From the NCBI RefSeq assembly GCF_963853765.1, contig NC_088858.1, positions 30,008,001-30,072,000 on the forward strand: a stretch of DNA of 64,000 bases. Reading direction: 5' to 3'. Positions 9,101-15,100 of this stretch are shown in pieces (the first letter of the stretch is position 1; every line of letters starts with the position of its first letter). A program made the translations under genes and the position numbers. The notes under the pieces are model-generated. The model did not search any database, had not been told where the DNA came from, and saw only the letters and a program-made list of their open reading frames with translations. Source of the DNA: Magallana gigas. Lineage: Eukaryota.

Positions 9101-12100
9101 AAAAATGATGAAAATTGGGGGTGGGAGGTCGGGGGATTCCTTGGACATATACTGGTATGTGTATATGTTCATGTTTATTTTTCATCTTTGTAAGTATGTC
9201 AAAATGAACTAAAGTCAAAGCAATTTGTTTTCTGATTAATTAAGTTTGTTTGCCCCTAAGATCACCCTCCCCGAGCTTCTGATGTGGTACAGACAGGACT
9301 TTAGCAGTGAACAGGAGGTATTCACAGCAGAACACGAGGGGATCCTCCATGTGGTAGAGGGGAACACCACAGGGTCAACACAGGCAGCCCTCAAAGAAAT
9401 GTTACAGATGGACAAGGTTCATGGTTACTCGGAGAGCATAGGTTAGTTGGTTTACCTAAGTTAATGTATTTATATTACTGTATTTATTCCACCCCAAAAT
9501 TGTAATCCTGAATGAAAGTATGCCTGGAAGACTTCATTTTTTTCTTGATGTTTTAAGAAAGAGGGGTGGGGAAATTTTTCTGTTCTTTCCTTTTTTATTT
9601 CCTTTAAAACCTGGGATGCATTTTATAAATTTGAAGAACTTATGACTTAACAAATTAAATAATGCTTATTAATTTCAAACTAATTAATATTTGACTTTAA
9701 TGGGCTGGAAAATATAAAATAGGGTAAATTGATAATTTTATAAATAAATTTTGTTCATCAAAAATCATTCCGCAAGACTGAAAATAATTACGACTTTGTC
9801 GTAAGTTCTTCTGTAAAACACAGCCCAGTTCTCTTTCTTTGGCACCTAAATTCTGTGCATGCCTATTGAATGCTCAATATCTTGTAGATACAACTGGGAG
9901 GAAAGAACTTCCCTTTAAAGTCCGGACTGCCAAATTTCGGAGCCACTTTTTGGTTAAATTTGACAAAGAGTATAGTACTTCGACTTCTGCTTCCTCAACA
10001 CCTACAATGGCCGCTCTCAAAACACATAGACGAGTTACCTCTCTTCCAGAGAATATGGATCTTTCGTTTGAACTCAGTGGTGAAAACAAGAAAAACAGCT
10101 CTATGAAGTATCAGTTAACTCCCGTAACATTGGAATACATCAAGGATGAGAGCCCCCTGGTGGCCACCTTAGTTAGTCTGGTGTGTATGGATGAGCTGGA
10201 CGACATCGAAGAACATCTGAATGTTGACTACTTCACAGGAAGTCTTCGGAGTCGATCCTCCTCAGAGATGAGTCTGGTGGACATTAAGAGCTATAGATAT
10301 CAAAAACTGACTCGAGACTATCCCATACTTAAGGGCCACATTCTAAGCTTTGTGATTCCTGTGGCTGGGGCAGAAGATCCGGAAATTTTGGGAAGTGCAG
10401 ACCCCATTCTAAAATTCATTTCTAACAATATATCAGACAGAGTGAAAGTGTGTATGCTTAATTTACATACCAGCAAGGAGTATCAAGTCACTTTAATGAA
10501 GCTGTTGGAGGATCTGACTAGAAAGGGAAAATGGTGGAATGTGATGTCACTCCTGGAGAGTATACCTATCATGGTTACAAGGAAGCATCCTGACCTCTGT
10601 GTCCTTCATGATTTTGCCTTGACCTGTTGTGTGACAGGCTTGGTCAGAAAAACCCAGCCCTTGACCAGATCTCAGATAGAGAAAACAGTCAGCTGTTTGC
10701 ACAAATTTTTGGACAAGGAATTATTTGTACATTTGTTGATGTCGGTGTACAAGAAGTTGCCCTTAGAAGAGAGTTGTGAACTTTTTGACCTGGCCTACTA
10801 TACACATATACATGAATCTCTGCATTCAGCAGTGAGCACAAAAATCAAGGAGTTGCAAATGTTTCTCAGAGTAAGTTCTTGTAAATTTATAAGGATTATT
10901 TAAAAGTTTTAATTAAGGAAGTGGGTATACGAGGGTCAATCAAAAAATACGAAGACTTTTGTCATAGCTATGCTACTTAATGTCATATCATTACTAAATT
11001 TGGTAGACATAATTTAGCAATAGTTTCAAACAATTTGCAAGAAAAAAGTGAATAAATTCCTTTATTTCTAAGAATTATTTAGAATCTAATCCTGCAAAAA
11101 TGAGATCACGGCACACGGTCAAAATTTTTGTAATGTCAACAATAAATCATATAATGTTGAAAGTAATATCTCAATAAATTGGGCTTCAAACCAAATAATA
11201 TTGAAACCTCAAATTAAGTTTTGTCTTGGTATTCTATGTTCCAAATAATGACGGGATGCATTTTTTTGTCGAACAGATATTAGTAACTAAAGACAGATAG
11301 TCCTCTTTAGAATTGACTAAAAACATCAACGTCGCCGGACATCACGGCGCAACGAGAGGTACAAAAAAATGAATTTAACCCAGGAAAAAGCCGACACAAG
11401 TTTTGAAAATGTTCAATGGTGCAAAAAATAAGTCAACAATTATTTGCAAGTTTGTGTTTAACTGTGATAAATTTTGTGGGGGTGATGGTAATTGTATTTT
11501 GAATATAAAACAGTCCGAAAGAGAGTCGAATATCTGTAAATATTTGGTGAAAAAATAAGTAACGTCAACCGATCGACGTTCGGGGTTATCCTTACTGTAA
11601 ACTAAGAGATACACAGTTAGAAAATGAAAACTTTGAAGAACTAACTTATGATTCTCGAACAAATGTGTGCAAATAAGATGTTAAGTGGTTCAGTGCAATC
11701 TTAAATTGTAAGGAGAACGGCACAAGAGACTAAACAGGATATAAAGATGGGGTATATCTATAAACTGTGCCTGTTTAACTTTAACGTCATGCTTTGAACG
11801 TTACCCTGCACCGTGATGACAAAACATGTTGTTTTTAAAAAGGGGGTAACAAAAATACCGTTTCATCAAATGGACTAAAACTTCGCATATCAATAACATA
11901 AGTGTTGGTGCGCAGATTAATCTGTTAAGTATGACTTTCATGAAAAATGTATGATAGACAGCCACATTGTCTTCGTATTTTTTGATTGACCCTCGTACAT
12001 GTACATGAAGTAGAAAAGCCCAAAATCAATTCTGAGTTTGAATCCCTATTTAGCAGCTTATAACCTAGATATCCCTCTTTACCATTTCAGATTGTTCTTT

Positions 12101-15100
12101 GAAGTTTATTTTCCTGGTTTGAATGAAACTACCGTAATTATACTTAATAGTCATTCTTGAATTTCATTGTACTTTAAACTTTTAGGTAACGGAATGTGCC
12201 AAAACTCTACAGTTCAAGCTTTCCAGTGGAACTTCCTTTGAGAAGCTGGAAAAAGAAGATATTGAGGGTTTGGGGCAGTTGTCAGAGTGGAGAAATGTCC
12301 AGGATCCAACACAGGCCAGTAGTGTGTTGTCTGTGTTACTCAGAACAGGGGACTACGAGACAGCCAAGCGCTGGTGTGCTTATGTCAGCTTTCCACAACA
12401 AAAGTCTTTGGTAATTAGTGAACATTATATAAATAGTGCCTGTTTGGGAGGGTAACAGTTGAAATTGACACCCCGAGAAAACCATTGTCAACCGACGCGA
12501 AGCGGAGGTTGACAATGGTTTTCGAGGGGTGTCAATTTCAACTGTTATCCTCCCAAACAGGCACTATTTATTTTGTTATACTGAATGTCTTTTTTAAAAT
12601 TTTTAAGAAAATTTTACTGCTTTTATATAGGAATAACGTGAATTCTACAGCGAACCGTACGCGCATAATTTTCGCGCATGTAACATTTTTTAATGTTACC
12701 CGTTGCCAAGTGCGTTGCTAACGCTGAGGGTAATAGCAGATATTATTAACTGCGTCTTAACCAATCAGATTTCAGTATTTAACATGAAAGTATAACAATA
12801 TATAAATAGTGCCTGTTTGGGAGGGTAACAGTTGAAATTGACACCCCGAGAAAACTTCGTGTCGGTTGACAATGGTTTTCGAGGGGTGTCAATTTCAACT
12901 GTTATCCTCCCAAACAGGCACTATTTATTTTTTTATACTGAATGTCTTAATTTTTAAGAAAATTTTACTGCTTTTATATAGGAATAACGTGAATTCTACA
13001 GCGAACCGTACGCGCATAATTTTCGCGCATGTAACATTTTTTAATGTTACCCGTTGCTAAGTGCGTTGCTAATGCTGAGGGTAATATAAAATATTATTAA
13101 CTGCGTCTTAACCAATCAGATTTCAGTATTTAACATGAAAGTATAACAATATGAATAAATATCAATAAATTTTAATATTTTACACATGTTTTGTTTGCTC
13201 AAGATTTTCATATGTATTGTATCTTTTCTTTAGGATGTCATAGAACATCAACTGTTCACACTTCTGGAAAACTCCAAGTCTAATTCAACCAAGTCATTTA
13301 TGGTGAGTTTTAAATTGACCATTAAAAAATGAAAACAAGCTATACTGGTAGATTTTTTTAAAAATCCATTATGATCTTGGAAGAACTGAATGATACAGTT
13401 TTTAACTCTCCCAATGTCTGTCATTCTTGTTCATTAGATATTAGAGGAATTGAAACAGACCAATGAGAAGGACTGTTGCAGAATCTGTGAGAATTTGCTG
13501 GAGAAATTGACCAGTCAGAAGGACTGTTTGTTTGTGGTGACTTACATGATAGAGCATCTGACTGGGGTGTTGACAGAGGAAAGAGTGGATGTTCTCCATC
13601 AGACACAAATTGGCTGTGAGGTTAGTTCATTTTAGCACACATATCTCCTACCCTCTCCTCGTTCTCCTCCATATATATTCCAACATCAGATAATCTGAGT
13701 GTCATCACTTTGATATACATGTACATGTACCGGATACCAGTGTACTTATTTTATGTTTTATGAGTATAATATTCAGCCAATTGTATGCTTTGAAATCATG
13801 TTTATTCTACGCATTAATATCATTTGATTCCAGATGTTGCTTTGCATGCCAGAGCCGTTTGTTTGTGACTATCGCCCTCTAGTGTCAGAACCAAAACTGA
13901 TGTTAGAACAGCTGCTGATGAACATGAAGGTATGAGTACCTGTTGTACAGAAAACCGGCATGGCATGTCTCTTTTCCTTAAATAAACAAATTAGGGTTGG
14001 AATATATCTGCTCAGTGATAGCCTCCTTTATTTATTTTTTGTAAATCAACCAAAATAGACTAAAGGTTTGACTTAATATGACATTGTGTAAAATAATAAA
14101 AAAGATAAGAAATAATATCTATGAATTTTAAATTAAAATCCTGTCTGGTGATCCAAACTTTAAATCATTGGGTTTTTCTACACTAACATTTAGTGATTTT
14201 ATCACACTAAAATTTTATTATTATTATTATTCTTTAACAAATGATTCATTGAAAAATATAACTGTTTGATATCATCCTAAAAACATCCAATGAATAATCC
14301 TAGTTAATCAGAAGTTCCTTTTTTGGAATCAATATGAATACCTGTAAATAGATTTAAAAAAAAACCCAGCTGTTACAGTAGTACTATGATAGCTAGGAAG
14401 TATAATTTATAAACAAATTCTTTATCTAGGTTGAGCTAGCTAGTCAGGCTTTTCAGAAAGTCCAATATAAACTGGAGAAACTGAGAAGTTCTGCTCAAAG
14501 GTTCACACAGCAAGATTTTAACAAGTTGATAGCTGAATATGCAACAAAGGCCCTGGAGTTTATTGTCATACAGTATGCAGAACTCGGTGAGTGTAATGCA
14601 AGTTAAGTTACATGTAAAGAAATATTCTGTTAAGACTTTAATCGCATTTTTCATTGTTGACTTTATGCTTTGGTACAAACTATTCCTCAGACAAAGATCG
14701 CTCACAGTCTCAACAATCGAACGCCTCAGATGGCTCCTCAGATAAGTTGGAGGGAACAACAGACAAATCGCCTACAAAGAGAACTAGTTTATCGGAGTCC
14801 GTCAGAATCAGGAGGAGCATTGATTACACAGGTCAGAATTCTAATCGGAGTTGATGAAAAGTAGGACAATGTGACAATAGGTCTCCTTCTCTGTAGAATT
14901 AGATGATCAAGAATATCATGCTTGTGATCTCCAGTAATATTTTGTCACTTAAAGAGTTGCCAAGCTTTTTGGATTCAAATGAGTGATTTTTTTTAATGGT
15001 GTCTTCTTCTTACCCATTAAGATATACAGTAAAATTTGTTTTAGTATTAACACAGATATAGTGAAAGCCAGCCAAATTTTGTAAAGTCCCTAGCTGGCAA

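What the first reader, a model, noticed from the sequence alone, without database searches (positions are those of the whole stretch)
12427..13149. Tandem hairpin elements with opposite (flip/flop) loop orientations
Seen: copy 1 has the hairpin centre CCATTGTCAACC-GACGCGAAGCGGA-GGTTGACAATGG. Copy 2 reads GAAAAC-TTCGTGTC-GGTTGACAATGG. That is the reverse-complement loop (TCCGCTTCGCGTC, with one CpG-to-TpG change) plus a deletion of about 15 nt. The outer-arm asymmetries (GGGTAAC vs GTTATCC, CCCCGAG vs TTCGAGGGG) keep the same orientation in both copies, so only the tip is inverted. Knowledge: flip/flop hairpin isomers and head-to-tail multimers are hallmarks of rolling-hairpin or rolling-circle replication (parvovirus ITRs, poxvirus ends) and of recombinase-excised circles. 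Inference: this family may move through a single-stranded or hairpin-resolved intermediate rather than by cut-and-paste.
Basis: partly seen in the sequence, partly recalled or inferred. Interest (0 to 1): 0.72.

Follow-up and report, generated by a model that had tools for sequence, protein, structure and literature searches.

The report
Two stacked hairpin-ended oyster transposon copies
The "tandem hairpin repeat" is two separate copies, from different subfamilies, of a very abundant small oyster jumping element that inserts at one specific short mirror-symmetric site; the flipped hairpin tip is a rare inherited variant, not evidence of virus-like hairpin replication.

Summary
Window 12426-13149 is a head-to-tail pair of hairpin-bearing units. 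Unit 2's tip is the reverse-complement loop with a 16-nt deletion and one CpG>TpG change.

- The family has about 1,850 near-identical copies, and 94-97% carry one loop orientation.
- Flips occur almost only where the nearby G.A bubble has also become perfect pairs. That is the signature of template switching or hairpin repair in a palindrome.
- Unit 2's flip is inherited. Its nearest relative (L069, another chromosome) is a full-length flipped copy 4 substitutions away.
- The two units belong to different subfamilies, so the pair is two insertions and not a concatemer.

The element is a 373-bp non-coding transposon (TATATAAATAG...GTATAACAA) with no TSD and no TIRs. At one end it has a 143-nt hairpin whose mismatches all favour one strand. 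It inserts at the edge of a palindromic YAT|N6|ATR site. That site also lies inside the element and is partly rebuilt at its end, which explains the nests and 62 head-to-tail junctions.

The insertion is polymorphic among oysters. The enzyme is not identified: I lean to a tyrosine recombinase (Crypton type) over a Helitron-type Rep.

Earlier notes of this scan described the same element design on other DNA of this genome.

The parts
12411..13233 (+). Host intron (GT at 12411, AG at 13232-13233) of the gene that an earlier scan note calls spastizin/ZFYVE26. It is 823 nt, of which 724 nt are the two elements.
   Evidence: sequence: exon ...AAAAGTCTTTG|gtaatt and ttctttag|GATGTC. The gene name comes from scan note s1-385422 and was not tested here.
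12419..12425 (+). Left half of the target site (TGAACAT, ending in the conserved YAT). It is host DNA, and the insertion point lies between 12425 and 12426.
   Evidence: In 39 non-family flanks, position -2 is A in 37, -3 is C or T in 38, and -1 is T in 28. Self-nested insertions show that CAT belongs to the host.
12426..12798 (+). Unit 1: a full 373-bp element of the youngest subfamily, with 2 private substitutions.
   Evidence: Boundaries come from nested insertions and head-to-tail junctions.
12429..12571 (+). Unit 1 hairpin of 143 nt. It has a G.T wobble, a tandem GA/GA internal loop, a second GA/GA, and a C(GAA)G cap (loop 12494-12506).
   Evidence: fold of both strands. On the other strand the features become A.C, TC/TC and a TTC loop.
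12573..12582 (+). Inner inverted repeat TTGTTATACT, which pairs with the element's last 10 nt.
   Evidence: (I15).
12680..12699 (+). Internal small palindrome GTAACAT-TTTTTA-ATGTTAC. It is a perfect copy of the family's preferred target site and the hot spot for self-nesting.
   Evidence: insertions in both orientations fall exactly after GTAACAT.
12789..12798 (+). 3' terminal repeat AGTATAACAA of unit 1. The head-to-tail junction CAA|TATATA lies between 12798 and 12799.
   Evidence: the same 28-nt junction occurs 62 times in the genome.
12799..13149 (+). Unit 2: a 351-bp copy of an older subfamily. It lacks TTTTAA and has T and A at the two diagnostic columns. It carries a flipped loop and a private 16-nt deletion.
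   Evidence: Nearest relative is L069 (4 substitutions), against 10 substitutions and 3 indels to unit 1.
12856..12863 (+). Remnant of the flipped loop (TTCGTGTC).
   Evidence: The variant is unique in the genome.
13150..13166 (+). Right flank of the target (spacer plus right half).
   Evidence: the X12 contig that lacks the elements resumes at 13167.

Best explanation
SHOWN.
- The locus holds two independently derived copies of one family of 373-bp non-coding mobile elements, stacked head to tail in a short intron.
- The family has about 1,850 copies that keep an exact 29-nt hairpin core. Many are 99-100% identical.
- The element runs from TATATAAATAG to GTATAACAA. It makes no target-site duplication and has no terminal inverted repeats.
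- It always enters in one orientation, immediately after YAT of a palindromic YAT-N6-ATR site. The best form of that site is GTAACAT-N6-ATGTTAC.
- Its first 150 nt fold into a 143-nt hairpin. Every imperfection in it (G.T wobble, two tandem GA/GA bubbles, C(GAA)G cap) is favourable on the + strand and unfavourable on the complement.
- Its last 10 nt pair with the 10 nt just behind the hairpin, so the two ends meet on a folded single strand.
- Insertion keeps the YAT half-site and places the element's own AT-rich start (TATATA) beside it. The body also carries a perfect target.

INFERRED FROM THIS. Occupied sites and resident copies are hit again. That would produce the head-to-tail stacks and the self-nests.

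UNIT 2'S FLIPPED TIP. It was inherited from a rare flipped sublineage, then lost 16 nt locally.

INFERRED ORIGIN OF FLIPS. Across the family, flips arise sporadically by strand or template switching, or by hairpin mismatch repair, inside the palindrome. They are mostly dead ends, because the active source keeps the strand-marked 'flop' form.

INFERRED ENZYME. A site-specific recombinase acts on the folded strand with a single strand exchange at the edge of a 6-bp spacer. A Crypton-type tyrosine recombinase is the more likely candidate. A Helitron-type HUH Rep is the main rival.
For: COPY NUMBER AND IDENTITY.

BOUNDARIES, NO TSD.
- Self-nested insertions in both orientations restore the host sequence GTAACAT|T... 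exactly.
- 39 non-family flanks show no duplication.

TARGET PALINDROME. A at -2 in 37/39, T at +8 in 37/39, Y at -3 against R at +9, and an AT-rich spacer.

STACKS AND FULL HALF-SITES.
- 62 exact head-to-tail junctions, including arrays with 373-nt spacing.
- 180 copies have the full GTAACAT half-site on the left flank.

TWO SUBFAMILIES IN THE PAIR. A 6-nt indel and two diagnostic columns separate the units. Unit 2 versus L069 differs by 4 substitutions; unit 2 versus unit 1 differs by 10 substitutions and 3 indels.

LOOP ORIENTATION.

FLIPS LINKED TO A PERFECTED BUBBLE.
- About 21 flips against 47 flops among CGAG/CTCG-stem copies.
- About 5 flips among about 1,645 copies that keep the GA/GA bubble.
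- Odds ratio about 147, p about 7e-27. These are partly estimated counts.
- Flips lie on young and old subfamily backgrounds, so they are recurrent.

STRAND-BIASED HAIRPIN.

POLYMORPHISM. A contig of run X12 joins 12428 to 13167 with 16 letters in place of 738. Runs X1 and X4 carry the occupied left junction.

CANDIDATE ENZYMES IN THE GENOME. At least 143 DUF3504 (Crypton-recombinase-like) matches and at least 150 Helitron_like_N matches.
Against: - No autonomous partner was found.
- The element's joined ends do not rebuild the right half-site at 6-nt spacing, only at 7.
- This locus's own right flank has A, not T, at +8.
- The empty allele has 16 letters where 14 were expected, and I could not read them.
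- Some homodimers (L026) share a private substitution, so some pairs may be true concatemers or may have moved as dimers.
- Copies whose whole central part (bubble included) is inverted would be invisible to my patterns. They are only bounded by the 131 hits.
- The flip/flop counts cover only copies with exact 29-nt cores.
Confidence: 0.72

Rival explanations
1. Helitron/Helentron-type (HUH Rep) non-autonomous element. A Rep nicks single-stranded DNA at YAT|T on the left boundary and at ACAA| on the right end. The long hairpin is the end signal. Stacks are rolling-circle read-through or circle multimers.
For: - No TSD, orientation-specific insertion, a conserved short sequence 5' of one end, and a strand-biased hairpin.
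- The genome carries at least 150 Helitron-like Rep matches, many in open frames of 2,600-2,900 aa.
- Oyster HINEs are abundant and TSD-less (PMC7492417).
- Some dimers are homogeneous (L026).
- One earlier scan note (s1-366424) filed the same hairpin as Helitron-type.
Against: - Canonical ends (5' TC, 3' CTRR, A|T) are absent.
- Helentron geometry is not met. PMC4067079 describes 12-15 bp subTIRs 2-4 nt and 38-60 bp from the ends, and a 5-10 bp palindrome 8-35 bp from the 3' end. Here the palindrome is 143 nt and 3 nt from the end, and the T|T strand puts it at the 5' side.
- A symmetric requirement 7-9 nt downstream of the insertion point is not expected for a dinucleotide target.
- The window pair is a heterodimer.
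- None of 26 Rep matches on the listed part of contig 1 has a family hairpin within 10 kb (by eye).
Confidence: 0.25
2. One reading: rolling-hairpin or hairpin-resolved replication producing flip and flop isomers and head-to-tail multimers.
For: Both loop orientations do exist in the family. Head-to-tail arrays exist.
Against: - 94-97% of copies have one orientation.
- Flips are tied to perfected stems and to particular lineages.
- There is only one hairpin per element.
- The window pair mixes subfamilies.
- Unit 2's flip is shared with L069 on another chromosome.
Confidence: 0.03
3. Local events only: a tandem duplication of one inserted copy, followed by a template switch and deletion in the second hairpin.
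For: Palindromes are prone to such events. The 16-nt deletion is private to this locus.
Against: - The differences between the units coincide with subfamily-diagnostic states shared by many other copies (the 6-nt indel and two diagnostic columns).
- Unit 2 is closer to L069 than to unit 1.
- The same precise junction recurs 62 times.
Confidence: 0.05

Closest known systems
Crypton DNA transposons (tyrosine recombinase; Goodwin 2003; Kojima & Jurka 2011, PMC3212892)
   Same: No TIRs and no TSD. The presumed circle integrates by site-specific recombination. The target is palindromic with a 6-bp spacer and the crossover lies at the spacer edge, which is the classic geometry of a tyrosine-recombinase core site. 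Non-autonomous derivatives outnumber autonomous ones. The genome holds many DUF3504-type recombinase ORFs.
   Different: Published animal Cryptons are said to have no terminal repeats or structures. Here a 143-nt strand-marked hairpin sits beside the crossover point. Only one strand exchange is visible: the left junction always carries the element's spacer. No recombinase-coding partner with these ends was seen by me.
Helentron / HINE non-autonomous elements of oysters and insects (PMC4067079, PMC7492417)
   Same: Abundant in this species, TSD-less, AT- or T-rich targets, an inverted repeat pair of which one member lies in front of a palindrome, and tandem repeats associated with the elements.
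   Different: The size and position of the palindrome, the spacing of the repeats, the absence of a microsatellite or central repeat, and the palindromic target. The whole element, not an internal monomer, is what repeats.
Folded single-strand substrates of bacterial tyrosine recombinases (integron attC cassettes; CTX-phi integration at dif). This is a functional analogy from my own knowledge.
   Same: An imperfect hairpin whose mismatches mark the reactive strand, a single strand exchange, no duplication, the target rebuilt at one side, and stacking of successive insertions in one orientation.
   Different: Those systems are prokaryotic. No homology is claimed and nothing was tested here.
IS200/IS605 and IS91 (HUH) insertion sequences. 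This is a functional analogy.
   Same: Insertion next to a fixed short sequence that stays outside the element, no TSD, and subterminal hairpins.
   Different: Those are prokaryotic. Their targets are not palindromic with a downstream half-site.
Parvovirus ITR flip/flop
   Same: A terminal palindrome whose tip exists in two orientations.
   Different: The orientations are far from equimolar. The element has one hairpin only and is a chromosomal repeat with no viral genes.

Membership tests
Rolling-hairpin replicons (parvovirus-like flip/flop) | Both tip orientations present at roughly equal frequency | tested here: not met
   Flips are 3-6% of about 1,850 copies.
Rolling-hairpin replicons (parvovirus-like flip/flop) | Hairpins at both termini of the unit | tested here: not met
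   There is one 143-nt hairpin per element. The other end is a 10-nt repeat.
Canonical Helitron | 5' TC, 3' CTRR with a short hairpin about 11 nt upstream, and insertion between A and T | tested here: not met
   The ends are TATATA... and ...ACAA (or their complements). The flanks are YAT| and |W.
Helentron / HINE | No target-site duplication | tested here: met
Helentron / HINE | [quoted passage not shown] | tested here: inconclusive
   T|T in 18/39 and T|A in 17/39. On the strand that reads T|T the hairpin is at the 5' end.
Helentron / HINE | 12-15 bp subTIRs 2-4 nt from the 5' end and 38-60 bp from the 3' end, and a 5-10 bp palindrome 8-35 bp from the 3' end (PMC4067079) | tested here: not met
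   The repeat is 10 bp (14 bp with a mismatch). One copy is terminal and the other is about 150 nt from the far end. The palindrome is 143 nt and lies 3 nt from the end.
Helentron / HINE | Autonomous partner with Rep/helicase(/endonuclease) sharing the termini | not testable with these tools
   Rep matches were located, but no more genome letters could be fetched. Coordinates alone show no family hairpin within 10 kb of 26 Rep matches on contig 1.
Crypton | No TIRs and no TSD | tested here: met
Crypton | Short similarity between the element ends and the target, serving as recombination substrate | tested here: inconclusive
   The joined ends ...TAACAA|TATATA resemble the target ..TAACAT|WAWAWW. 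The match is not exact, and the right half-site is offset by 1 nt.
Crypton | Autonomous copy encoding a tyrosine recombinase with the same ends | not testable with these tools
   There are at least 143 DUF3504 matches, none demonstrably linked. Earlier scan notes claim hairpin-ended Cryptons in this genome. I confirmed only that a recombinase-like ORF exists at the place one note gives (C6:43334130-43334582).
MITE / DDE cut-and-paste | Terminal inverted repeats and a fixed-length TSD | tested here: not met
   The ends are not inverted repeats of each other. The right flank starts with TAT in only 6/39. Nested sites show no duplication.
Known RNA families (Rfam 15) | Match at the gathering score | tested here: not met
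   Only sub-threshold generic long-hairpin matches: best 55.6 bits against a cut-off of 140.

The most novel reading that the evidence does not exclude
These hairpin-ended elements are mobilised by a eukaryotic (Crypton-type) tyrosine recombinase that reads a folded single strand. The GA/GA bubbles and the GAA cap mark the reactive strand. The enzyme performs one strand exchange at the edge of a 6-bp spacer. This would be a eukaryotic counterpart of integron attC or CTX-phi recombination. It would explain the site-specific, TSD-less stacking and why flipped tips do not spread.
Probability: 0.3. Interest if true: 0.85.

Novelty: new variant of a known kind. Interest (0 to 1): 0.5.

Why it matters
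Animal DNA transposons that use neither a DDE transposase nor the canonical Helitron ends are poorly understood. The recombination sites of Cryptons in particular are undefined.

This family offers a clean, young and polymorphic system:
- exact ends;
- an exact crossover point;
- a 20-bp palindromic target;
- a strand-marked hairpin;
- natural 'mutants' (flipped tips, perfected bubbles) whose low copy number suggests which features matter.

It also gives a simple, replication-free route from a transposon to short tandem arrays, namely re-insertion into a rebuilt target. That is relevant to the unusual scattered satellite-like DNA of oysters.

For the specific claim made (flip/flop replication), the result is negative.

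Tried and rejected
- TSD of TA/TAT: rejected.
- 'CAT belongs to the element': rejected, because the right nested junction lacks it and head-to-tail junctions lack it.
- Satellite DNA of the published oyster satellitome: no monomer of about 373 bp is listed (PMC8268682).
- Rfam: nothing at threshold.
- Metagenome scan for the hairpin core: no match.
- Search for an autonomous partner. I did not try another tool to get them.
- ORFs in the 147 fetched loci contain no recombinase or Rep.
- Coordinates show family hairpins 5.8-6.6 kb upstream of one multi-copy recombinase-like ORF family. The orientation places that ORF outside the element, so this is probably nesting in a larger repeat. It remains unresolved.
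- Short-read contigs cannot confirm the internal structure of the pair, because the repeat depth is enormous.
Full report
WHAT IS THERE

The window comes from a 564-Mb, 10-chromosome genome. Earlier scan notes call it the Pacific oyster, and public runs that hold the stretch include runs labelled 'oyster metagenome'.

The finding lies in an 823-nt intron (12411-13233). It consists of two direct units, 12426-12798 (373 nt) and 12799-13149 (351 nt).

Each unit begins with a long hairpin: 12429-12571 and 12802-12928 (DNA folds -75.7 and -59.7 kcal/mol, z about -21 and -18).

Unit 1's tip reads stem-GA-CGC-GAA-GCG-GA-stem. Unit 2 reads GAAAAC-TTCGTGTC-GGTTG.

THE FAMILY

- A DNA search of the window's own genome gave about 1,000 candidates. 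The 40 that were scored were 98-100% identical over the whole unit.
- Exact 29-nt patterns spanning the left-arm bubble and the loop gave three counts: 1,717 for 'CGAG arm + loop as in unit 1' (flop), 90 for 'CGAG arm + reverse-complement loop', and 95 for 'CTCG arm + flop loop'.
- I fetched all 90 places of the second class and 30 of the third, and typed each hairpin relative to the non-palindromic body.
- Most are ordinary flop elements in which the two-base GA/GA bubble has become a perfect pair, on one arm or the other.
- True flips number 21-25 in the second class and about a third of the third class.
- Flips that keep the GA/GA bubble, like unit 2, number only five in the genome: L069, L073, L099, L108 and unit 2.
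- A further pattern (131 hits) bounds a class I could not see directly: inversion of the whole centre including the bubble.
- Overall, 94-97% of about 1,850 copies have one orientation.

WHERE FLIPS COME FROM

Flips are tightly linked to a perfected bubble. There are about 21 flips against 47 flops among CGAG/CTCG-stem copies, versus about 5 flips among about 1,645 copies that keep GA/GA. The odds ratio is about 147 and p about 7e-27, with partly estimated counts.

A single switch of the growing strand to the complementary arm and back predicts this pattern. It inverts the loop, and it copies one arm's bubble bases onto the other. Perfected stems without a flip fit intrastrand hairpin correction.

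Flips occur on the youngest subfamily background (L065, L080, L090, L093, L117, L138; 0-3 differences from consensus) and on several older ones. They are therefore recurrent accidents, with at most limited spread.

UNIT 2'S FLIP IS INHERITED, AND THE PAIR IS A HETERODIMER

An alignment of 115 elements shows a succession of subfamilies.

- Unit 1 belongs to the youngest: 373 nt, with a TTTTAA insertion and C and T at two diagnostic columns. It has 2 private changes.
- Unit 2 belongs to an older type that lacks the 6 nt and has T and A at those columns.
- Unit 2 differs from unit 1 by 10 substitutions and 3 indels. It differs from L069 (contig 5, 47.78 Mb) by only 4 substitutions, one 16-nt gap and one 1-nt indel.
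- L069 is a full-length copy with normal arms and a flipped loop.

So the flip predates unit 2's arrival here. Only the 16-nt deletion is local; the variant is unique in the genome. The pair is not a duplication or a concatemer of one template.

ENDS, TARGET AND STACKING

Many loci show an element inserted into another copy, in either orientation, always at the small palindrome GTAACAT-TTTTTA-ATGTTAC in the body (12680-12699 in unit 1).

In both orientations the host sequence is restored exactly if the insert is TATATAAATAG...GTATAACAA placed after GTAACAT. The CAT in front of every solo copy is therefore host DNA, there is no TSD, and the ends are fixed to within 1 nt.

Head-to-tail junctions are always CAA|TATATA (9 of 11 in the fetched loci). 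The exact junction occurs 62 times in the genome, and some arrays are spaced 373 nt apart.

Thirty-nine insertions into unrelated DNA show these positions:
- Y at -3;
- A at -2 (37/39);
- T at -1 (28/39);
- an AT-rich 6-nt spacer;
- W at +7;
- T at +8 (37/39);
- R at +9.

This is a palindrome, YAT-N6-ATR, entered at the left edge of its spacer. The full GTAACAT half-site flanks 180 copies.

After insertion the YAT half-site remains, and the element's own start (TATATA, then ATA) follows it. I infer that the occupied site stays attractive. This explains stacks of unrelated copies such as the one in the window, and the self-nests.

THE HAIRPIN IS STRAND-MARKED

All three kinds of imperfection are favourable on the + strand: a G.T wobble, two tandem GA/GA internal loops, and a GAA triloop closed by C-G. 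On the complement they become A.C, TC/TC and TTC. The special stability of GCGAAGC-type caps and tandem G.A pairs is from my own knowledge and is not captured by the energy model.

The last 10 nt of the element pair with the 10 nt just after the hairpin. On a folded single strand the two ends therefore meet at the hairpin's foot.

POLYMORPHISM

Contigs of four public runs were laid on 12100-13500.

- Run X12 has an 870-nt contig that joins 12428 to 13167, with 16 letters in place of 738. This is an allele without either unit.
- Simple absence would give 14 letters. I could not read the letters.
- Runs X1 and X4 carry the occupied left junction.
- The interior cannot be checked with short-read contigs.

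MECHANISM

What is shown: site-specific, orientation-specific, TSD-less insertion with one visible crossover point, and a strand-biased hairpin.

What is inferred: the enzyme. Two points fit a tyrosine recombinase best:
- symmetric half-sites 6 bp apart, with the crossover at the spacer edge, are the textbook geometry of such an enzyme's core site (as summarised in PMC3212892);
- the target spacer resembles the element's first six bases.

The left junction always carries the element's spacer and the right junction carries the target's. This fits a single strand exchange resolved by replication. Bacterial recombinases that act on folded single strands behave this way (my own knowledge).

A Helitron-type Rep is the main rival, but the canonical Helitron features and the published Helentron/HINE features were tested and mostly not met (see membership test).

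The genome contains both kinds of gene in number. I did not seek them by another route.

EARLIER NOTES OF THIS SCAN

Several notes on other parts of this genome describe the same design:
- a long strand-marked hairpin with a GAA cap;
- short end pairing;
- TSD-less insertion at a mirror-symmetric AT-rich site;
- self-nesting and head-to-tail dimers.

Some attribute the design to Crypton-type recombinase elements; one attributes it to Helitron-type elements. I reached the target rule, the self-targeting and the stacking independently, before reading them.

I could not test the Crypton link. I confirmed only that a recombinase-like ORF lies where one note places a Crypton (C6:43334130-43334582).

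LITERATURE

In the library I searched, animal Cryptons are described as lacking terminal repeats (PMC3212892). Oyster HINEs have a different end structure (PMC7492417). No paper describing this family was found.

VERDICT

The flip/flop replication idea is refuted. The object is a young, abundant, site-specific hairpin-ended transposon whose enzyme remains to be identified. The window shows a two-subfamily stack, with one decayed hairpin tip.

Noticed in passing
G000 C1:1480113/1486297, C1:33244909/33251104, C1:30670673/30664117, C3:10792856/10798615: Family hairpins lie 5.8-6.6 kb upstream of, and on the same strand sense as, a multi-copy recombinase-like ORF family (DUF3504 match 18-161, about 251-aa frame with one TAA). 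The orientation puts the ORF outside the element. This is probably a copy nested in a larger recombinase-bearing repeat.
   Followed up: partly
G000 C2:28950497-29018827: Ten copies of the left junction GTAACAT|element recur every 7.6 kb. This is a tandemly repeated unit of about 7.6 kb that contains one element copy.
   Followed up: no
L107:227-379 (G000 C9:23992304-23992456): A hairpin-only derivative. It is a perfect palindrome TATATAAATAG...CTATTTATATA with fully paired bubble and wobble, and with no body on either side.
   Followed up: no
L098 (G000 C8:8611757-8612385): A copy with both bubble arms swapped (CTCG/CTCG, so TC/TC on the + strand) but an unflipped loop. It shows that the loop and the arms can be exchanged separately.
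   Followed up: no
window 12411-12425: The stack sits only 15 nt downstream of a 5' splice site and enlarges a 99-nt intron to 823 nt. Alleles with and without it coexist. The effect on splicing was not examined.
   Followed up: no
I read the sequence but did not analyse it.
   Followed up: no
G000, genome-wide: At least 150 Helitron_like_N matches, many inside open frames of 2,600-2,900 aa without stops. This is an unusually large stock of apparently intact Helitron/Helentron genes.
   Followed up: no
G000 C6:54953938/54954311, C7:24923884/24924257, C5:53684603-53686277: Head-to-tail junctions spaced exactly 373 nt apart, meaning arrays of three or more units, and one dense cluster with junctions on both strands.
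   Followed up: no
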